Origin: Selaginella moellendorffii | Taxonomy: Eukaryota > Plantae > Lycopodiophyta | Length of the DNA: 64,000 bases | Direction of reading: 5' to 3' | Assembly (NCBI RefSeq): GCF_000143415.4 | Contig: NW_003314264.1 | Coordinates: 414,774-478,773, forward strand | Shown here: one piece after another, positions 12,666 through 52,402 of the stretch | Layout of the letters: the number at the start of each line of letters is the position of its first letter | Numbering within the stretch: the stretch's first letter is position 1 | Program-made: the position numbers and the translations under genes | Notes under the pieces: model-generated | What the model saw: only the letters and a program-made list of their open reading frames with translations | Database searches by the model: none | What the model was told of the DNA's origin: nothing

Positions 12666-15600
12666 CTACACCTCAGAGGCCGCCTCCTTTTTGAGCGAGG
12701 CCGAGAACATATCAACCTGGCTCTTGATGCCGCTCGCCACAAAGGCAATCTGGAATATCTCCTCATACTTGTCCACGAAATGGACGTCGAGGCCTTCTTT
12801 TACGTGCGGCAAGAGCTCGTCGTAGTCCCGCTTGTTGGCCTTGGGAAAAATGATCGTCTTCACAGCGCTCCTCCTGGATGCCACAGTTTTCTCTTTTACC
12901 TGTTCCAAGTTCCAACAGTCAGTATTGTCAAGAAGAAAAAAGGAAAAAAATCATCTGCTTACCCCGCCAATGGCAAGAACTCGGCCAGTCAGTGTCACTT
13001 CCCCAGTCATTGCTACATCGTCGTTGACAGGCTTGCTGAGAGCCAGCGACAGCATCGAGGTGATCATAGTGCACCCGGCGCTTGGCCCGTCTTTTGGCGT
13101 AGCACCGGCCGGTACGTGGAGATGTAGTTTGCTGTTTGTAAAAAACTGGTTTTGCGGATCAATCTCTCGCAGGTACTTCCGCGCAAATGTGTGTGCTATT
13201 GAGGCGCTCTCCTTCATCACATCCCCAAGCTGACCAGTGAGTTGGAGCCCGCCTTTACCTTCACCCTCCTCAATCACACTCGTCTCCACATAGAGCGTGG
13301 AGCCTCCCATTGCTGTCCAGGCCAGACCCATGACGACTCCAATCGGTGTCTTGTCGTAGAAGCGGTCGCTTACGAACACGGGACTTCCCACGAACTCGTG
13401 AAGATTGGTGTCGTTGATTTTGATCTGCTCTTCTGCCACCTTTTTCTCTGCCTCCTCCTTTTCTTTGGTTTCTGATGACGCAGACTCATCCGGTACCTTG
13501 TTGTCTGTTTCCGATGTAGTAGAAGCCTTCACGCCCGTCAATTTTTCTTCCGGCTCTGAACACGGCGGTTTCTCCAACGGCAACTTCTGAGCAATATCCA
13601 CCTTTTCTTTCTCTGACGGTAGCATGGTCTCGGCCTCAAGCGTTTCACCCTCCTGGACGGCTGAGTCGGTTAGCTTAATGGCCATATCCTCCTTCTCAGA
13701 TGTTGCATCGGGCAAAAGCTCGTCCGCAAGTATCTCCAGCTTTTCATTCAGAACCGGCGTTTCTTTGAGTTCTGCTTCCTCTATGCTATTGGAGTCGTCT
13801 TCCACAAGTTTGATGGCACCGTCATTCTGCAAGCAACGTTCAATACCATAGAATATGAGGTACGAAAAATACCTCGGCATTGCTTTTCGTTTCGGCAACC
13901 GTAACCAGGTTATTCTGTTTCATTTCCTCCTCCTTGGGAGTATCAAGCTCACGTCGGACTAGTTTCAGCGCTATCTGTAAATGAAAGCTGTTGGGATTCT
14001 AAAGAACTCACCAATACTGCTACCTTGCGATAAATCTTATCAATATGCTTCTGCAGATTTCTAACGCCAGCCTCGCGACAATAAGTTTCTATAAGACTGT
14101 GCATAGCACTGTCACTAAGCTCAACCTGCAACAACATTTGAGAAGACCTGTTAATATTGAAGGCGATTCTACCTGTTCTTTTTTTATCCCACAATTTTCT
14201 CGAGCTTGGCGTTCGAGATAGTCACGGGCAATGTGCATTTTCTCATCAGTAATATAACCGACCAACCGTATAACTTCCATGCGATCAAGTAGAGGTGCAG
14301 GAATGTTCTCAACCAAATTTGCAGTGCAAACGAACAAAACCTACAAGGAAACGAGCATTAGCTGAAAGTTGTGAAAAAACAGAGAGCTCACTTTTGACAA
14401 ATCTATGGGCACGTCAAGGTAATGGTCAAGAAAATTAGCATTCTGCTCCGGATCTAGAAGTTCCAATAATGCACTAGCTGGATCTCCTGCATGACCCCGA
14501 CCAAGCTGCAATGACAACGTCAGAACGAATTGTTAAACTAACTGTTCAAGATCCTTCACCTTATCAATCTCATCGATCAGCACCAAAGGGTTAGCAGTTC
14601 CTGTCGACTTCAGGCACTGAACCATTTTACCAGGCATGGCTCCAACGTAAGTTCTGCGATGCCCCTGAAAATAATAAAATAGTAGAAACCAAATGTAATG
14701 ATAGCTGCAATAATCACCTTAATCTCAGCAACATCACTAAGGCCACCAACTGAGAAGCGAAAGAATTTTCGATTGAGCGCCTTAGCAATTGATTTCCCTA
14801 TGCTTGTTTTCCCTACTCCAGGGGGTCCTGAAAGGCATATTATCTTTCCTGAAAAGAAAAGAAGAAAAACCAAATCAATTGTACGCATTGGCACCAAAAC
14901 AAAAATTCATACTGGCAAAATTTACCAACAGCGGTGCCCTTCAGCTTGCCAACAGCGATAAACTCAAGTATCCTTTCTTTTACATCGGACAAGCCATAAT
15001 GATCCTCGTCCAGAACAGTTTGAGCCTGCCGTACATCAAAGTTTTCCTTGCTGCAAGGAAAAATTGGAATCAATGACCGAGTGATAGAAGAAAAGAAAGA
15101 ACCTGTATTGTCCCCACGGTAGTGCTGTCAACCAGTCCAGATAGTTTCTTGTAACATTGAACTCGCTCGAACTGGACTCAAGGCCTTGCAATTTAGAGAG
15201 TTCCTCGTCGATGACTTGCAAAACGTGCTCCGGACACTGCTTTCTATGTGGCTCCAATCTCTCTTTAAACTTTACTGTATACGTGAAAGAGAGGAAGTCG
15301 AAACGGGATTAAAACTAGAGAAACAAATTTACCAGTAAGCGCTGTTTTATCATCTGCTTCAATTCCCAGCTCCTACACCAGAAATTCAGAAGCTTAAATC
15401 ATTAAGCTCATTAAGGTACCTTCTTAATAGCTTTCAGTTGCTCCATTAAGAAAAACCGGCGTTGATCACCGCTTATTTTTTCCTCCACGTTTTTCGCAAT
15501 AGTCGCCTGGGAAAGCTTTAAGAACGAGAATAGTCATAATTAGCATACCTGTAGCTTTGCAAGCTCAAGCTCTTTCTTTAAAAGTACAAGAGCTAAATTG

Positions 15601-38789: not shown

Positions 38790-39269
38790 TGCCGCGTCGC
38801 GCCGCTGCAAAATCCCGCAAGAACCCTAGAAATATTTGAGACGCCACGCTAAACGTCGCGTGACGTGTCAAGTAAATAAAGGTAACTTTTCTTACCCTTG
38901 TTTAAAAGTGTCTAATGGCAGTTTTAATTTATTAACATTTAATTTTTTGCACAATTATGAGTATTTAAAGCTGAAATTAAATTAATAGAATTATCGCAAG
39001 ATAAAAAATATTTCAAAGGAAAATTTTCAGACAAAAAGCAACAATCTTTTGTAAGAGTTTAACGGCATCCCTTGTCAATCGAGTTTCCTTTTGTAGCTTT
39101 GAAAGGACACCCGCCGCATTTCCTGCAATGACTTTGTTGCTTATGTACGTCCAACCCAGCTGCATATCAAACCTTTAGAGTTTAAGATGTCCCGGAGAAT
39201 TTGTGCTTTCCACAAGGTCTTATTTTTTATTAATTCATATTTTGGTAGATAAGATTCACTACCATTCAC

Positions 39270-39945
39270 ATGGCAAACAGGAAACGCTTCAGGGCTTTTC
39301 GGACCAGGATCTCGCCAAGCCCCACGAGCTGACGCCAAATCCCACGAACATCTTCTACTGCAGGCACGTTATGTTCTCCCGATGTTTCATCATTCATGGA
39401 GGACATGATGGTTTCCAAAACCCAGTGCGATCCCACCGCAGACGAATCGAGTGATCCAAACGAGAAATCTCACAAAGTTGATCACAGGAGAGGAACTCTT
39501 TTCTGGTCTCCACGCCCTACCTCCAGTCAACCCTTCTCCACGTACGTTTCCCTAGCCGCCTACCTCTGGAAGGCAATCGGGGCCCAGTCCAAGAATATGG
39601 TCCTGTGCCCGGTCAACGGCCGCCGTGGACTCAAACTCCCGGCTCGCTTCTTCGGCAATGCAGAGTTTAGAGCACGGTCTGACTTGGCTTCGACAATTGA
39701 CAGGGGCTTGTTGCTTCCAGGAGGATTATTTGCAACCAGTTATGGATTTCTTTGAACTGAAGTAATAGCACGAGTACCAATAACATAATTCTCCCCAGAT
39801 GACAGAAGAGGTTCACAGGCGCTTGCTCTCGATCCAAACTTGGTCATCACTAGCTGGGCTCGACTGCCCTGCTATGAGCTCGGCTTTGGATTCAACCGTC
39901 CAGTTCTTGCCACGCCCACCAAGGGGGGTTGCGAAGGTTAGTGGT
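39270..39945 (+). pseudogene. Degenerate BAHD acyltransferase copy
   Basis: Collinear near-identical patches to 40531-41910 (QETLQGFSDQDLAK, QPFSTYVSL, LCPVNGRRGL, DPNLVITSWARLP) separated by large deletions, frameshifts and stops. Confidence 0.9.
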
Positions 39946-40530
39946 AGTGCTTACTTTAAGAAACTCTCATATTGTCTACTCGGGGTTTTATTATCAACTC
40001 GCTATCCTTTAGCCATTGCGGTGCCGTAGCCAAACGTTAAAAGAGCAAGTCTCTTGGAGTGTAGGATGATTTTTACACAGAGTTTTGAACTTACATTCTT
40101 CCGTTGCCATGAACTTTTGCAAGTATAATATTCAGCGGGATGGTTTATTTGCTCAACATTATTAATCAAAAGCCTTGGTATGTCTGCTCGAGCTGCTGAT
40201 GATTCTTGTGGAAGTAAAATTGATGCTCTGCTATAGCAACATTCTCATGGACAAAGGAAGGTGATTACTTACGCTACTTCTCCAATCAAATTGTTAAAAG
40301 CATGGGGATTCTGTCCCCGTGATAAACTTGCTCAGACCGAAATCGAAGCAGGAAGCTATGCATGTTTAAGGTTCTGCTCTTGTTTGTGGTTTGGCTAAAC
40401 CTCAACGTAAAAAATTTAGCGGCAGACAAAGCACCACAAAGACTCCAGTGACCACGTGGCAGATTTGGGATATTCGACAGATATGCGCGTTAATAATCTT
40501 AGTGTTTGACCTGACACAGCTATGTATAGG

Positions 40531-41910
40531 ATGATTGAGAGAAGCTCTTCGAGATGGGTGTCGTCGTCGATCAAGAATCCTCTCTCGACATGGTTTCCTC
40601 TCACCCCGATCGATATCCACATGCCACTAATTCACAGCCCTCTGGTCCTCGCATTCTCCTCCCCGGTTCCTGAAGGATTTGTGGCCGATTTGGAGCGCGC
40701 GATCCAGCAGGTGCTGTGCCACTACAGAGATTTAGCTGGGCGGATCCGGAGGAACGAGTCCGGGAAGCTTGGGATCTATCTCAACGACCAGGACGAGGAC
40801 TGCGGCGTCCTCTGGATTGAGGCTTCCACCCAGGAAACGCTTCAGGGTTTTTCGGATCAGGATCTCGCAAAGCTCCACGAGCTGACGCCAATGGCTTCGC
40901 AGGATCCCGTGAACATGGGAATCCCTCTTCTACTCCAGGTATGTTCTCCCGATGTTTCCTTCCATTGGCATACATGTGTGGTGTAGATCACTCGATTCGG
41001 TTGCGGTGGGATCGCACTGGGTTTTGGAGTCAACCATCGTGTCGTCGATTGCAACGCGCTCCCGGAATTTCTCCTCGACCTCGCAAAGTTGACCAGGGGG
41101 GAGCGGTCAATCGAGGAACTCCTGTCCGGGCAGCCCATTGACCGCTCCTGCATGATGCCCCGCCGCCCTCCACGCCCTAGCTTTGACCACTCTGACTACA
41201 CCACCAACATCATCACAATGCTTTCCAGCGACGAGGCCAAGTCGATCGTCACCCGCACGATCCACTTCACCAGAGAGCGTCTCGCGCTCCTCAAGTCCGA
41301 GTGTAACAAAGGTCGCTCCAATCAACCCTTCTCCACGTACGTCTCCCTGTCTGCATACCTCTGGAAGTCAATCACCGCCGCCCGGGAAGTCAACGTCCAG
41401 TCCAAGACGATAATACTGTGCCCGGTCAACGGCCGCCGTGGGCTCGCGCTCCCGGCTCACTTCTTCGGCAATGCGGTGTTTAGGCGGTGCGCATGCGCCA
41501 CGGTTTGCGATATCCTTGCCATGCCCTTGGGTGACTTGGCCTCGCTGATTGCCGCAGGCTTAGAGTCTTTATCGCAGGAGGATTATTTGCGATCGGTTGT
41601 GGATTTCCTTGCATTGAAGCAACAACACGAGGACCAGCAGCGTAGTTCTCCCCAGGCGGAAGAGATTCCCCGCTTTTCTTTCGATCCAAACTTGATCATC
41701 ACTAGCTGGGCTCGACTGCCCTTCTACGAGCTCGACTTTGGATTCGGTCGTCCGGTTCTTGCCACCCCCACGGAGGGCCCTTGCGAAGGTTACGTGCGAG
41801 TGGTGCCATCTAGCAATGGTGACGGAGGTCTAGCAGTAGTGCCCACTCTAAGAAACGCTCATATGGACAAGCTTGTCTACTCCATTTTCAATGACAACAA
41901 AGATGGTTAA
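40531..41910 (+). CDS. BAHD acyltransferase, intact (~443 aa, 2 exons)
   Basis: HxxxD motif (HRVVD), FFGNAV, SWARLPFYELDFGFG. Intron 40939-40986 at the usual Q|IT position. Confidence 0.93.
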
Positions 41911-42038
41911 CACTTTCCATTGATCAGCAATGGACAAGCCTGTCTACTCCACAGATGGTTAGTGAAGGGATCAAATCGCATCGACAAATTGTTAACCTGG
42001 CAGCTCTTCCATTGTTCAGCACAAATTCATTTTCAATC

Positions 42039-43361
42039 ATGGTCATCACGATTGAGCGGTTGCCGGAATGGATCCGGATTCAGAGCGACGACGGGAGCAG
42101 CGATCATTCTCCATGGCTACGTCTCAGCCCGATCGATTCCCTGATGCCAAGCTATCACGTCCCACTCCTCCTTGCATTCTCTTCGAAGCTACGTACCTCT
42201 TCTCGCTTGAAAGATTCGCTCGAAAAGGTGTTGGGCTACTACATGGAGCTCGCGGGTCGGATTGGAAGAGATGAATCTGGGGATCTGGCTATTCGTCTTA
42301 ACAACGAGGGAGTTTTTTGGGTGGAAGCCGTCGCAACGGAAACATTGGTCGAGTTTCTGGGTAGCGATGATGGTCATGGAAATATTCACAAGCTTACACC
42401 CATGTCATCATCGAACAATCTAGATTCAAGCAAGATTTCGATCAGTGAAGTTTACTCGTTCCAGATCACAAGCTTTAGCTGTGGAGGATTTGCGCTGGGG
42501 CTTGGAATCCAGCACCACGCCGCCGATTGCAACGCGGTCCCCGGCTTCCTGGCCGACTGGGCAGCACTCGCGAGCGGCAAAGCCGCGAAGTTTTCGGACA
42601 GTCGCTCGTCCGATCGTACCTTGATGATGCCCCGGGATCCACCCATGCCGGAGTTCGAGCACCCCGAGTACGCGCTCACGCCGAAGCACTACACAGTCCT
42701 CACCCCGGAGGAATCCAAAGCCCTCACCACTCGACGGATCCACTTTCGCAAAGGCGAGCTCGATCGGCTCAAAAACAGTGAAAGCGCTGGAGGATCTAGC
42801 TCCACATTCGTGTGCCTGGCAGTCCATCTCTGGCGGCTCATCACCATGGCCAGGGGAGTCAGCGGCGGCCGCCGCACGGTGCTCTACTGCCCGGTCAATG
42901 GTCGCCGTGGACTCTCACTCCCGGTTGACTACTTTGGCAACGCCGTGTTCCGGGCGCGCTGTGAGGTCAGCGCGGAAGATCTCACGGAGATCCAAAATCC
43001 ATGTCGTAGAAGGGCAATCGAGCCCAGCTTGTGATGACCAAGTTGGGATCGAAGCTGATCCTCGTGAATCCGGCGCTGTCGTGCTGCTCTGATTTGGGAG
43101 CTTCTCTCAGCTGGAGAGCCACGAAATCCACCACCGATCTCAAGCGCTCGGCCTCGGACGCCCTCTCGATACTCGCCGCGATGATCGAAGCTCCAAATTC
43201 CAGTGGGAACTCCAATCCTTGCCACACCCACGAATGGTCCCTGCGAAGGCTACGTCCGTGTTGTTCCATCGGGCCTCCAAGACGGGAGCTTGGAAGCCGT
43301 CGCTACTCTTCGCCAAGAACACATGGAAAACCTACTCGCTTTGATCGAAGCACACAAGTAA
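42039..43361 (+). pseudogene. BAHD acyltransferase disrupted by an internal ~220-bp inversion
   Basis: HHAAD and YFGNAV on the + strand; LRSVVDF...SWARLPFYDMDFG on the - strand at 42990-43209; PCEGYVRVVPS...TAA resumes on + in the original frame. Confidence 0.9.
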
Positions 43362-43409
43362 AAAAATTATCGATAGAGTATAGTGAAACATCCAAAGTCT
43401 TGGATTCGA

Positions 43410-43772
43410 TCACTCATCACCCGAGGGCCGAGTTCTCTTTGAAATATCATAGTTCGTCTTCTCCAAGCTCTCTTCTTCCTCCTCATCCCCATCCTTCTTC
43501 TTCTTCACCCTCTCCTTGTAGCTCTCGTCAGCAACATTGTGCCCGACTTTGCCATACCTTTTCTTCTTGCTATCATCATCCGGTTCTCCTCCACCTTTCG
43601 ATCCGCTCTGGCCACAAAACCATCGCTGCTGCTGCTGCTGATCCAAGCTCCAATTCTGCCCAAACCCAAACTCCAACGAAGAAGAAGACGCGACCAAAGA
43701 ACTCGTGCTACTCGCGCTCTGGCATTGCCCGGACAGGACAAACCTCCTCGTCAAATGGATCAATCGAGACAT
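43410..43772 (-). CDS. Small (120 aa) putative mitochondrion-targeted protein of unknown function
   Basis: ATG-initiated single-exon ORF with an Arg/Ser/Leu-rich acid-free first ~30 aa, an RWFC cleavage-like motif and a highly charged C-half. Confidence 0.6.
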   Translation of the reverse strand: MSRLIHLTRRFVLSGQCQSASSTSSLVASSSSLEFGFGQNWSLDQQQQQRWFCGQSGSKGGGEPDDDSKKKRYGKVGHNVADESYKERVKKKKDGDEEEEESLEKTNYDISKRTRPSGDE

Positions 43773-44280
43773 CGCTCGCTAGATCTAGCCCTAATTTTCG
43801 CTATTTGCTGGCCTTCTCTCTTCTTGCATGGGTGCCAAGTGTGGCTCACTAACTGCACCACCTCATGATCTGGCCACCTGGTAAAAAGACCTTTTACCGT
43901 TAGATTTGCTCTGGATAGGATTCGAACACATAAGGTGCTTATAAAATCCAATTATTTTCTACGACTTGGATACAAACGGTGTATCGAGGCCGATCTTTCG
44001 CCAAAGCCAATTATATTATCTGCTTTGCTTGAAATATTTGCTGGTAAAAATATATCACATGACTCTTACCTCCAAATATATCACCTTGAAAACCCCAACG
44101 TAGACAAATATTCCTCCTGCTACTCGCGCTGTATTCCGTGCGTACTACACCCAATACCAGCATTTTCCACACAACACAGTTGATCCTAGTTTTTGCTTGT
44201 TTTTACTTTGGACATTCCCTTCTCATCGAGCCTGGCTCTCCAAGAGAAGAATCTCTCTTTTACAAAAGCTTTCCCCCTTG

Positions 44281-46537
44281 CTACCTCCTCAGCCTGGAAG
44301 GTCTGCACCGAAACTCCGCCAGTAACGCTATATGATCTGACGACCACTCTGGAGAAGGGAGCGCTGTGTCTTTCCGCAAGCTCTCCTCGTCCAAAAGCTC
44401 GAGTAGTGAATCCACCACTATTGAATCCGCTGCAAACAGAGAAAAAAAAACGTTTTGCTTGTGTCAATCGCTTCATCTCCAGGAAGGCCAAACACTCACC
44501 GGTGTAGAATATGTAGTCCAGCGTACCAAGGAAATCTCTCGTGCAATTTGTGAAAAGGGGCTCGTTGCTACCATCACGCCGCGATAATGCTGAGTACGCA
44601 CTTACCTGTAAATATAACAAGCCAGTCAAGAGTGAACGAAGCTCGAGTTCTTACCAGAGGCAATTGGTGGCACAACTTGCTCGCAGGTCTTAGAATTCCA
44701 AGAGGATCAATGGCAAGCTCCGGGTGAGTTGGTTCGACTCTTCCTGTGGCCAGGAGGGAGTGTGGAGCGCTGAGAACAAAAAACAAAAAAGTTGGCACTC
44801 TCGGGAATCAAGAAGTAGAGACTGACCTGCCAGGAACAGAATTAAAATCACCAGCAACAAGCATGGGAATTTCCGCGCTTGCAGCAATCTTCTCCAGACC
44901 TTTAAGAAGAGTTTGCACCTGAAGAGAAAAACTCAGATCACGCGAATTGCTATTAGGGATACTCTACCTGCCATAGTTTCACGTCTTTCAGCTCAGGATT
45001 CGCATGAATATGAGTATTGGCCTGAAAAGGAAAAGGTGTTGGAAGTCGAGATCCCACTGCATGTAGCTTACCACACAGATCAATTGCTTTTTAGACGGGT
45101 CTGGATAATCCAAGACCTCCAGCACCACAATGAGAGCGACATTATCCTAATGCAGAGGCCAAGTCAGTATCAATGACACAGCGAACGGAGAAAACCTTGA
45201 GAAGGCGGGTGAGAGCTGCTTTTCTTTGAGCAGAGGGCATGTAAGCTTCTGAAAACGATTGTGCTGCCTTATTGAACTCCACCTGATCCAGTAATGTGTA
45301 ACCATTTGTAATGGTTTGGATTAGGAAATTAAAAATCTACCTCGTATTTTTTGACTTGTAAGAACCGATCATTGCGATAAAATGTAGCACAACCATCAAT
45401 AGTGTACACCCCCGCAGCATAGACCTGAACCCCATGGCATTAAGTTTGAGTGTCCTAGCACTAGACAATACCTCTGCAGTCTTTTTCTTGTAAACCGCCG
45501 AATATCCGTGCTTCTCAAGTTCCGGAGCAAAGAACTCGTCAAAGTGGTCGCTTTGAATCTGAAACAATCATGTAGAGATTATACGTAGAAGTCCTGTGAG
45601 AGCATACCTCTTGCAGACACAGGATATCCGCTCGATAGCCCACAATCTCGCGCAGCAGGTTTTGCCGTCGGTAGGCCCACGAGAGAGCCCACTGGGGGCA
45701 ATAGCTGTACATGTCGCTGGTGGCATACAAATCAGCCAGTACATTGTATGACAGAACCGTGAAAGATCCTGGAGCCCCCAGCCGACCATCCAACTCAAGC
45801 CCGTCAATGGTGTTCACTTGAACCATTCTCCTGGGTGGTGGACACGGAGCTGGAATAACCCGTTGTGTGAGAAGAGAGTTAGAGAGTCCCCCTGTTGGCA
45901 TTCCCGTGGCCGTCGACATAACCACGCACTCCAGCTTGAGAGCATGTCCTACGTCTTCTTCCGTCGGTGTATACGTTTTCACAGAGCCTACTTCCCATAT
46001 CTCTGTCCCGTTCTGGTCCTGTGTCTTCGTAGGCCCCCCTATGATACCGTTGCTCACTGGAGCACCCCCGCCTACAGACCCACCCCGTCCAAACAACTCG
46101 TCTTCCTCGGCCCCATTCTCTCGAGCAATGTTTGTGGCGTGTGCATGCATTGCCCGGTGATGACGCCATGAATCGGAGAAGCACTTGGACGAGCAGTGGA
46201 GGCTCTTGCTCACTGGCAGCTTAGCTTTCAAACAGCCTATACACTGAAGAGTCGCAGGCTCCGAGGGATGCACGCTACACACGGATGCTCTCTTGTCAGT
46301 TTGGATTCGGCACCTGGAAGATTGAATGCGTAAGAAAAAGTGAATAGAGTAGAGGAAAAAAAAAACACTTTTCTTTTACCATTTCCACCTAAGATAGTAT
46401 CCATCGATGGGAGATGTTACTGGAACGTCGTCAGTCGTGGTAGTCCCATCGGGAAGCCGTAGTTGGACGTAGGGAGAGAGCTCGCAGCCTACAATAGGAA
46501 TGTCCGACGGTAAATGCAAGCGCAGGACGCTCAGCAT
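44281..46537 (-). CDS. CCR4: CCR4 deadenylase homolog (EEP nuclease with plant N-terminal zinc-ribbon), multi-exon
   Basis: MLSVLRLHLPSDIPIVG, CSVHPSEPATLQC, FTVLSYNVLAD, ILCLQE, GTLDYIFY, SSDHIAL. Confidence 0.93.
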
Positions 46538-48178
46538 ACTGCCTCTATGGAATGACGATCCTGGACTAGAAAATCTACAAGCTTTCCCTGTGCGCTACCA
46601 CAGGCAGATGGGCCACTGGGCGGATCCGCCATCAGTAGCCCACCTGCCTTCCCCAGAGCCCTCGCCGATCCCCACGGCGGCGATTCAAGCTACAGCCCCC
46701 CTAAATCTCGGCAAACCAGCTACGAGAATGGCCGGCGCGTCAAATCTATTGATCCCCGCAGCTAAGATTACCTCGCGGCAGCCGGCGCTTGCGGCAGAGG
46801 GGACGAATGGGCTCCATCGCCTGCGCCATGCCTCTGGATACCCTAATCCCGCCTCAAAACCCTAAAATCCACTTTCTCCAAATTGTGGATGGACTCATGG
46901 ATGTGATCACGCATGCCCATACGCAACCGAGAATATGCCGGAAGCATATCCAGCGTGTCGAATCAAATGTTGCGCTGCGTGTGGTCCGTTATCCTTATCT
47001 GTTACGCTGGCTTTTAATCCCATCCCTCTCACAATCTTTATCACAAACGCCGGGATTTCGTGTCAAAACGATCCACACCAAATTTACTTGCACGGCATTT
47101 TCTCCTAGAAACTCCAGCCCGCCGCCACCTTTGTCAAAAAGAGAATCTACAACTCCAGCCTGTGCGTGCATGTGGCCGCCACCTAAGATTACATTGAAAA
47201 AATCCCACGCACCAACTTATCATACTCCGCCACCTTAGGGCTACAGGGGAGGCGTGAGGCACCCAAAGTTCTCACATTGCCCGCCACCTTTCTCGAATGG
47301 GCGCGAGGCAGCCATCCATTACCACACGTATAGTTAGTTCGTTCTTGTGTTCCAAATTCCCCGGGCCCGTACGCAATCTAACGGAATATTCTTGCGCCGT
47401 AAGGGTATATACCGGGTAAGAGAAAAACAGGAGCGAGGAGAAAATATATAGGGTGGGCAACGAAAACGCGGACCCCAAAATTGGCGATCCAATCGCGCTC
47501 ACTCCACCCAACGCTTCTCCACGACACTTACAAGAAGAGCACAAGGAGGCCTTTTCTCTCTGTCTCTCTCTCTTTTTTATTTCCTGGCCAGGAAAAGGGA
47601 AGAGGGCGATTCTCTGTGAGAGCGAGGAGCGCGATTCCACCACTCCACTCACATTGTTCTTGCGCGGTCGGTCACGCTGGCTACTGAGGGGCGCCTCCTC
47701 CATTTGCTCCCGGTCACGGGGAGAGCTGATCTCCTGTCCCCGAATCGCTCACAGGTGGCTCGCCCCGAATTCCCTCCATCGCCATCGCCGCGTGAACCAG
47801 GTCAGTCCCTCTCCGCGTTTTCCCAGATGGGTTGTGATCGCTTCCTTTCGATCCGGGGGATTTTGAGCTCCAATTGGAGTTCTTGGCGAGATCAGGTCTC
47901 CTTGCTTGTTCTTGGCTTGGGCGAGTGATGCGAGGAGCCTCTTTTCTTCTTTCTTTTTCTTTTCTTTTCCTTGGCTGCCAAGAATTCTGGATTGGATTCG
48001 TTGCTTCGCTCGCTTGCCCTGATTTTGGCTTTGCCTTGAATTCCTGCTTGAGACTTTAATGCCTTTTAATGCGCTGGAGTGGAGTCCTTCGTGTTCTTGG
48101 CGATTTTCTCAGTGGTTTCTTTGTGCTCGATCTCTTTCTCTCTCAGGTGGTGGTGGAGGAGGATACTTTGGGACGAGG

Positions 48179-49987
<1,809 letters not shown>

Positions 49988-50152
49988 TTCGTTGGGGCGT
50001 CGACGACGAGGAGAAAGAGGTGGGAGATTTTGTAATATAATTCCTTTGGTCAGCTTAGAGATAGTTCCCTGATAGCTGGAGATAGAAATGCTGGGGAATG
50101 GGGGGTTTAGCTTTACGGGACACAGGGATAAAGCAGATAGCAAAGACAAGAA

Positions 50153-50711: not shown

Positions 50712-52402
<1,691 letters not shown>

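What the first reader, a model, noticed from the sequence alone, without database searches (positions are those of the whole stretch)
42986..43213. 220-bp inversion inside BAHD copy 3; flipping it restores one uninterrupted ORF
Seen: the segment 42990-43209 encodes the BAHD C-terminal part (LRSVVDF...SWARLPFYDMDFG) on the opposite strand. It is bounded by 8-bp inverted repeats, GGAGATCC (42986-42993) and GGAACTCC (43206-43213), with one mismatch. Re-inverting gives a stop-free 440-aa ORF 42039-43361, but with DFG(S/T)P rather than the DFGFGxP of the paralog, a net 6-bp loss. Inference: most likely a recent microhomology/template-switch inversion that knocked the gene out. A segregating or reversible switch allele, or a mis-assembly, are alternatives.
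Basis: partly seen in the sequence, partly recalled or inferred. Interest (0 to 1): 0.75.

Follow-up and report, generated by a model that had tools for sequence, protein, structure and literature searches.

The report
Small heterozygous inversion breaks spikemoss gene
One of the two chromosome copies of the spikemoss Selaginella moellendorffii has a 218-base piece of an acyltransferase gene flipped in place, the other copy has it the right way round but is broken elsewhere, so this is a real but ordinary gene-killing mutation and not a switch.

Summary
The window is Selaginella moellendorffii scaffold GL377568.1. BAHD copy 3 (42039-43361) matches Pfam Transferase positions 13-316 on the + strand and 316-383 on the minus strand.

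I fetched the plant's other haplotype (GL377614.1). There the same segment lies in gene orientation, 99.5% identical. So the inversion is derived and heterozygous in the sequenced plant.

- The true breakpoints are 42987|42988 and 43205|43206, so 218 nt are flipped.
- The motif is an intact DFGSGTP, split by a breakpoint.
- The 6-nt loss (GCAAGC) lies at the other junction.
- The left arm of the 8-bp inverted repeat was created by the junction itself. Junction microhomology is 0-1 nt, which argues against repeat-mediated or reversible inversion.

The likeliest cause is a one-off flip after two breaks, rejoined by end joining. Template switching is the main rival.

The other allele is also dead (+1, -23 and -12 nt indels). 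A second 72-nt in-place inversion lies in copy 1 on the same haplotype. About 32 kb of flanking haplotype comparison has none.

The scan has noted similar micro-inversions elsewhere in this genome.

The parts
42039..42987 (+). 5' part of BAHD copy 3 coding sequence (codons 1-316 plus 1 nt), up to the left breakpoint. The annotated 359-aa product (41955-43034) reads on into the flipped DNA and stops at 43032-43034.
   Evidence: Pfam PF02458 positions 13-316, E 4.9e-46. The exact 359-aa ORF is an annotated protein of GCA_000143415.2 GL377568.1. Collinear with L002 up to 12416.
42513..42527 (+). HXXXD catalytic motif of BAHD enzymes (His-His-Ala-Ala-Asp, codons 159-163), intact in this allele. 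The other haplotype has HHVAD.
   Evidence: Translations. The codon 161 Ala/Val difference is listed.
42988..43205 (-). The flipped 218-nt segment. On the minus strand it codes ...LEFGASIIAASIERASEAERLRSVVDF...SWARLPFYDMDFGS, the last part of the BAHD fold up to the fourth residue of the DFGSG motif.
   Evidence: Pfam positions 316-383 on the minus strand. Window 42988-43206 equals L002 12640-12422 on the minus strand, 99.5% identity with 1 mismatch. Allele alignment.
43206..43361 (+). 3' part of the copy 3 coding sequence (GTPILATPTNGPCEGYVRVV...EAHK and stop), in original orientation.
   Evidence: tblastn to copy 2 residues 214-266 of its C-terminal ORF. Collinear with L002 from 12641.
42986..42993 (.). 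It is GG from the left flank plus AGATCC, the flipped end of the segment. It is a product of the junction and is absent from the other haplotype.
   Evidence: Sequences; alignment.
43206..43213 (.). These are the Gly-Thr-Pro codons just after the right breakpoint, unchanged in both haplotypes.
39399..39470 (-). A second in-place inversion (about 72 nt) on the same haplotype, inside the BAHD copy 1 pseudogene. It flips the F-A-C-G-G coding stretch.
   Evidence: Window 39399-39470 equals L002 9080-9010 on the minus strand, 95.8% identity. The L002 orientation is collinear with copy 2 protein P0008.
40522..41910 (+). BAHD copy 2, the intact paralog with one short intron at the family's usual position after Gln. 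Motif DFGFGRP.
   Evidence: Annotated 443/446-aa 'BAHD family acyltransferase, clade IV' proteins on both haplotypes, differing at 11 of 443 residues.

Best explanation
BAHD copy 3 on this haplotype of Selaginella moellendorffii carries a derived 218-nt inversion (42988-43205) in place, with 6 nt lost at one junction. The plant's other haplotype keeps the ancestral orientation.

Most likely mechanism (inferred): the DNA broke at two points 224 nt apart, the fragment was re-ligated backwards by non-homologous end joining, and a few bases were trimmed. Neither homology nor a recombinase was involved.

Consequence: the mRNA would read 316 correct codons, then 15 junk codons (EIQNPCRRRAIEPSL) and a stop. 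The product would lack about 120 C-terminal residues including the DFGSG motif, so the allele is a null.

The other allele is also a null through separate indels, so the sequenced plant has no working copy 3. The gene has probably been under relaxed selection.

Shown: the inversion, its breakpoints, its polarity, its heterozygosity, and the lesions of both alleles. Inferred: the repair pathway and the loss of function.
For: - The segment is collinear with the family profile only when read on the minus strand.
- The other haplotype (L002, GL377614.1) is syntenic: HSP90 upstream, the same 570-aa gene downstream, 97.6-98.6% identity in the flanks. It has the segment in gene orientation with 1 mismatch in 219 nt.
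- The flanking alignment blocks end and start at 42987 and 43206.
- L002 has 6 extra nt (GCAAGC) that match the Pro-Leu of paralog copy 2, so the window allele is the derived one.
- Junction microhomology is 0 nt on the left and 1 nt on the right. There is no inverted repeat at the ancestral breakpoints.
- The flipped ORF is stop-free over 440 codons.
- There are no N gaps within 8 kb, so this is not a scaffolding error.
- The second inversion, in copy 1, has the same style of junction: about 5-7 nt lost at each side and 0-2 nt microhomology.
- The alt allele carries -12, +1 and -23 nt indels and no gene is called there.
- Allelic dN/dS is about 0.6.
Against: - No sequencing reads or independent assembly could be examined, because the look-up of encoding contigs closed.
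- End joining and replicative template switching leave overlapping scars, and small junction deletions fit both.
- Two in-place inversions 3.5 kb apart on one haplotype are not what two independent rare two-break events would predict. They may instead point to one complex replication-based event.
- Expression of copy 3 was not tested.
- dN/dS rests on only about 26 differences.
Confidence: 0.5

Rival explanations
1. The same real, derived, heterozygous inversion, but made during replication. The nascent strand switched to the opposite template, copied about 218 nt backwards and switched back (short-range template switching, FoSTeS/MMBIR). The same faulty replication episode possibly also produced the 72-nt inversion in copy 1.
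For: - In-place inversions with small junction changes are the signature of template-switch events (PMC5453318; PMC8755829).
- Two such inversions lie 3.5 kb apart on one haplotype, while 32 kb of flanking haplotype comparison has none.
- A 135-nt insertion (40280-40414), a roughly 600-nt deletion and a 6.3-kb indel lie in the same 4.5 kb.
Against: - Microhomology at the switch points is only 0-1 nt.
- The ancestral allele has no flanking inverted repeats, whereas all 59 definite human-chimpanzee microinversions were flanked by them and were 17-33 nt long (PMC8755829 abstract).
- 218 nt is long for this class.
Confidence: 0.33
2. Assembly or cloning artefact. The flip exists only in the consensus of the Sanger assembly (for example from a rearranged clone) and not in the plant.
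For: - Per-haplotype Sanger coverage was modest, and no reads could be checked.
- The scan has flagged several small in-place inversions in this same assembly. That could mean a property of the assembly rather than of the plant.
Against: - A 218-nt (or 72-nt) flip is shorter than a Sanger read, so an assembler cannot create it by mis-orienting pieces.
- There is no gap within 8 kb.
- The flipped allele has its own SNP and a 6-nt junction deletion.
- An earlier follow-up in this genome reported checking sequencing runs at another micro-inversion locus (note s1-431164, unchecked here).
Confidence: 0.08
3. A reversible or programmed inversion switch, or recombination between the 8-bp inverted repeats, as the first reader offered as an alternative.
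For: The derived allele does show GGAGATCC and GGAACTCC at its ends. Nominal chance is about 2.5%.
Against: - The ancestral-type allele lacks the left arm, which the junction itself created.
- 6 nt were lost, so flipping back would not restore the ancestral sequence.
- No recombinase gene was seen among the called genes near the locus.
- The other allele is a decaying pseudogene, so there is nothing to regulate.
Confidence: 0.02

Closest known systems
Micro-inversions / short-range template-switch mutations (human-chimpanzee microinversions, PMC8755829; template-switch mutation clusters, PMC5453318)
   Same: A short DNA segment is replaced by its own reverse complement in place. It is seen as a difference between two closely related sequences, with the ancestral state known from an outgroup (here the paralog).
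   Different: The definite human-chimpanzee cases are 17-33 nt long and all flanked by perfect or near-perfect inverted repeats. This one is 218 nt, has no flanking repeats in the ancestral allele, has 0-1 nt microhomology and lost 6 nt.
Two-break inversions repaired by non-homologous end joining (as seen after paired nuclease cuts or radiation; my own knowledge, not looked up here)
   Same: Blunt or near-blunt junctions, a small deletion at a junction, and no requirement for homology.
   Different: Here the breaks were spontaneous and their cause is unknown. No direct evidence for the repair pathway exists.
Other in-place micro-inversions noted by this scan in the same genome (RNase T2 duplicate with three flips, PPR-DYW 158 nt, NUP214 duplicate about 360 nt; notes s1-431164, s1-353469, s1-431154, s1-394699)
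   Same: Same species and same size class (tens to hundreds of nt). They sit inside duplicated or dispensable genes. At least one is also confined to one haplotype.
   Different: The RNase T2 flips were reported at short inverted repeats. Here the ancestral allele shows none.
BAHD acyltransferases, clade IV (agmatine/hydroxycinnamoyl transferase-like), as NCBI names copy 2
   Same: Pfam Transferase fold, HXXXD motif and a DFGxG motif near the C terminus.
   Different: Copy 3 is only about 44-52% identical to copy 2, has DFGSG instead of DFGFG/DFGWG, and is disrupted on both haplotypes.

Membership tests
BAHD acyltransferase family (Pfam PF02458 Transferase) | Significant match to the family profile over the whole fold | tested here: met
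   Pieces were searched apart. The + strand piece covers profile positions 13-316 (157.7 bits). The minus strand piece covers 316-383 (25.8 bits, above the 22.7 cut-off). The last 52 aa are too short to score alone but align to copy 2 at 58% identity.
BAHD acyltransferase family (Pfam PF02458 Transferase) | HXXXD catalytic motif in mid-protein | tested here: met
   HHAAD at codons 159-163 (42513-42527) in the window allele and HHVAD in the other allele.
BAHD acyltransferase family (Pfam PF02458 Transferase) | DFGWG-type motif near the C terminus, contiguous with the rest of the protein | tested here: not met
   In the window allele the motif is split. D-F-G-S lies on the minus strand at 42999-42988 and G-T-P on the + strand from 43206. 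It is contiguous (DFGSGTP) only in the other haplotype. So this is a BAHD-derived pseudogene, not a working member.
Inverted-repeat-flanked microinversion (template switching at inverted repeats) | Perfect or near-perfect inverted repeats flanking the segment in the ancestral sequence | tested here: not met
   The ancestral-type allele L002 has ACGGGCAAGCCACTGG at the left and GGATCTGGAACTCC at the right, with no complementary arms at the breakpoints.
Inverted-repeat-flanked microinversion (template switching at inverted repeats) | The inverted segment is an exact reverse complement with no loss | tested here: not met
   218 of 224 nt are retained and GCAAGC is lost.
Programmed invertible DNA switch | Recombinase plus conserved inverted-repeat recombination sites, with both orientations functional | tested here: not met
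   The ancestral allele has no repeats. None of the neighbouring called genes has a recombinase Pfam domain. The inverted state truncates the protein and the other state is a frameshifted pseudogene.
Heterozygous structural variant between the two assembled haplotypes of S. moellendorffii | The second scaffold is syntenic at haplotype-level identity and differs in the orientation of the segment | tested here: met
   GL377614.1 matches the window at 98.57% over 22.6 kb and at 97.6-98.2% in the near flanks, with the same gene order. That the published assembly contains two haplotypes is stated in PMC3095285.
Heterozygous structural variant between the two assembled haplotypes of S. moellendorffii | Both junctions supported by independent reads | not testable with these tools
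   No read data were available, and the look-up of encoding contigs closed before the Logan look-ups.

The most novel reading that the evidence does not exclude
The BAHD cluster is one instance of an unusually frequent mutation class in Selaginella moellendorffii: in-place inversions of about 70-370 nt without ancestral flanking repeats. They sometimes occur several to a locus on one haplotype (two here within 3.6 kb, three reported in an RNase T2 duplicate). That pattern would point to a lineage-specific repair or replication habit, or to single multi-break events, rather than to independent accidents.
Probability: 0.2. Interest if true: 0.55.

Novelty: new member of a known kind. Interest (0 to 1): 0.3.

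Why it matters
As a single locus it matters little. It is a dispensable tandem duplicate of a plant acyltransferase, dead on both chromosome copies.

Its value is as a clean, polarised example. The ancestral and derived junctions are both in hand, so the mutational scar can be read base by base: 218 nt flipped, 6 nt lost, 0-1 nt microhomology, no flanking repeats. It also shows that an apparent terminal inverted repeat can be a by-product of an inversion rather than its cause.

If the several micro-inversions now noted in this genome prove real and frequent, the two-haplotype assembly of this plant would be a good data set for measuring how often such events arise and by which pathway.

Tried and rejected
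- A word-index protein search with the 359-aa truncated product found no allele or close relative, only itself and proteins at 36% identity or less. The allele is simply not annotated on the other haplotype.
- The route that worked was indirect: copy 2's protein cluster, then its allele on another scaffold, then that locus with flanks.
- Exact look-ups of the minus-strand ORF, the 52-aa tail and other window ORFs found nothing.
- P0013 had no gene position on record.
- I tested whether two substitution clusters between the alleles (41982-42001 and 42401-42413) are further tiny inversions. By eye their reverse complements do not match, so they stay unexplained complex changes.
- Two further minus-strand hits in the haplotype comparison (15042-15062 and 47580-47595) are palindromes identical in both haplotypes, not inversions.
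- The large HMMER search, structure prediction and fold search were not used. The family is clear from Pfam and nothing rests on an absence of relatives.
- The joined (flipped) protein was built only in a local script for translation and alignment.

Full report
**What the window is.** The exact 359-aa ORF at 41955-43034 is an annotated protein of Selaginella moellendorffii assembly GCA_000143415.2, scaffold GL377568.1 (4.34 Mb). Window position 41955 is record position 456728. The locus is a tandem group of three BAHD acyltransferase genes downstream of a cytosolic HSP90 gene.
- Copy 1 (about 39254-39938) is a fragment.
- Copy 2 (40522-41910) is intact and is named 'BAHD family acyltransferase, clade IV' by NCBI.
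- Copy 3 (42039-43361) is the subject of this finding.

**Checking the observation.** I searched the pieces apart, by reference.
- The + strand piece 42039-43031 matches Pfam Transferase (PF02458) at profile positions 13-316.
- The minus strand piece 42985-43227 matches positions 316-383, taking over exactly where the + strand stops.
- tblastn with copy 2 shows the same break in strand.
- A local script that flips the segment gives a 440-codon ORF without stops from 42039 to 43361.

The 8-mer repeat is weak evidence by itself. 2.5% of random 218-nt segments of this window have an 8-mer inverted repeat with at most one mismatch touching both ends, and the region holds many chance inverted repeats of that size.

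**The other haplotype.** The published assembly of this plant contains both haplotypes (PMC3095285) and was made with Sanger reads (PMC5750206).

The truncated copy 3 has no annotated allele. Copy 2's 90% cluster, however, holds a second 443-aa protein on scaffold GL377614.1. Fetching that gene with 10-kb flanks gave locus L002. A second look-up gave L003, further along the same scaffold.

The two scaffolds are syntenic. They are 98.57% identical over 22.6 kb (window 11859-34439) and 97.6-98.2% identical in the near flanks.

Across copy 3 the alignment breaks into three blocks:
- Window 40415-42987 equals L002 9879-12416 on the plus strand.
- Window 42988-43206 equals L002 12640-12422 on the minus strand, with 1 mismatch in 219.
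- Window 43206-50000 (extending to 51270) equals L002 from 12641 on the plus strand.

In L002 the gene reads straight through...EDLTGKPLEFGASII...FYDMDFGSGTPILATPT.... Copy 2 and the family profile are collinear with L002. The L002 orientation is therefore ancestral and the window allele is derived. The sequenced plant is heterozygous.

**Corrected anatomy.**
- The flipped stretch is 42988-43205 (218 nt). One G is ambiguous at the right junction.
- The ancestral interval is 224 nt. The window lacks GCAAGC (L002 12417-12422), which turns Thr-Gly-Lys-Pro-Leu into Thr-Ala-Leu in the flipped reading. Copy 2 has Pro-Leu at that place, so this is a deletion in the window allele.
- The C-terminal motif is DFGSGTP, with all five residues. 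One breakpoint falls between its Ser and second Gly codons.
It mirrors the right flank GGAACTCC only because the ancestral sequence had the direct near-repeat GGATCT-GGAACT (Gly-Ser-Gly-Thr). The ancestral allele has nothing like it at the left breakpoint. So the repeat is a consequence of the inversion, not its cause.
- Microhomology at the two junctions is 0 nt and 1 nt.

**How it most likely arose.** A repeat-free inversion with blunt junctions and a 6-nt loss fits two double-strand breaks, a fragment rejoined backwards, and end joining. I rate this at about 0.5.

Replicative template switching can give the same product and stays a serious rival, at about 0.33. It gains from the second inversion described below. 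It loses from the near absence of microhomology and of the flanking inverted repeats that mark the well-studied microinversions (PMC8755829).

Recombination between inverted repeats, or a reversible switch, is contradicted by the ancestral junctions and by the lost bases.

An assembly artefact is unlikely for four reasons. The flip is shorter than a Sanger read. No gap lies within 8 kb. The flipped allele has its own SNP. The junction deletion is specific to it.

**Consequence for the gene.** The window allele would give 316 correct residues (331 aa counted from the true start), or the annotated 359 aa from an upstream ATG. Either way the product ends in 15 junk residues and lacks the last ~120 residues of the fold. 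From what is known of BAHD enzymes this should be a null. That is inferred, not tested.

The other allele is also broken:
- a 12-nt in-frame deletion (window 42238-42249);
- a +1 insertion inside a cluster of substitutions (about 42401-42413);
- a 23-nt deletion that removes part of the conserved DYFGNAVF stretch (window 42923-42945).

In each case the window allele agrees with copy 2, so these lesions are derived on L002. No gene is called there.

The two alleles thus descend from an intact gene and were disabled independently. Their coding differences give dN/dS of about 0.6 from some 26 changes. That is compatible with relaxed selection but not decisive.

**A second inversion.** In copy 1, window 39399-39470 equals L002 9080-9010 on the minus strand at 95.8% identity. 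L002 is again the collinear, ancestral orientation. About 5-7 nt are lost or replaced at each junction, with 0-2 nt microhomology.

The rest of the roughly 36.6 kb of haplotype comparison has no in-place inversion. The two remaining minus-strand hits are palindromes shared by both haplotypes.

The same 4.5 kb also differs between the haplotypes by a 135-nt insertion, a roughly 600-nt deletion and a 6.3-kb indel. With only two events the clustering is not statistically secure, but it is noteworthy.

**Relation to earlier notes.** The scan has noted other small in-place inversions in this genome: an RNase T2 duplicate with three, a PPR-DYW family, a NUP214 duplicate and one more. I did not re-check them. 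They suggest that this kind of lesion is recurrent in this assembly, whether for biological or technical reasons.

**Verdict.** This is a real, derived, heterozygous micro-inversion that disables one allele of an already dispensable BAHD duplicate. The breakpoints, the motif reading and the microhomology mechanism needed correction. It is a new member of a known kind and of modest interest.

That step was left out, and the flipped sequence was used only in local scripts.

Noticed in passing
window 39399-39470 (BAHD copy 1): A second in-place inversion of about 72 nt on the same haplotype. The other haplotype (L002 9010-9080) has the gene orientation. A few nt are lost at both junctions.
   Followed up: yes
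L002 11499-12796 (other haplotype's copy 3): The uninverted allele is itself a pseudogene. Relative to the window allele it carries -12, +1 and -23 nt indels and an Ala-to-Val change inside the HXXXD motif.
   Followed up: yes
window 42401-42413 vs L002 11852-11865; window 41982-42001 vs L002 11442-11464: Two dense clusters of substitutions plus small indels between the haplotypes. The first creates a 7-nt stem (ACAAGCT...AGCTTGT) in L002, which could be a short template-switch scar. Neither is a simple reverse complement of the other allele.
   Followed up: partly
window 38957-38981 vs L002 1728-8012; window 39265-39278 vs L002 8295-8891; window 40280-40414: Further structural differences between the haplotypes around copy 1. 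There is a 6.3-kb AT-rich segment only in L002 with no long ORFs, about 600 nt holding the N-terminal part of copy 1 only in L002, and 135 nt only in the window.
   Followed up: partly
window 40960-41090 (copy 2) vs 42440-42470 (copy 3): Copy 2 has a short intron right after the Gln of ...LLLQ, the position typical of BAHD genes. Copy 3 reads through the equivalent point (..YSFQITSF..) without an intron.
   Followed up: no
window 51271-51387: A run of 117 N (assembly gap). It is the only gap in the window.
   Followed up: no
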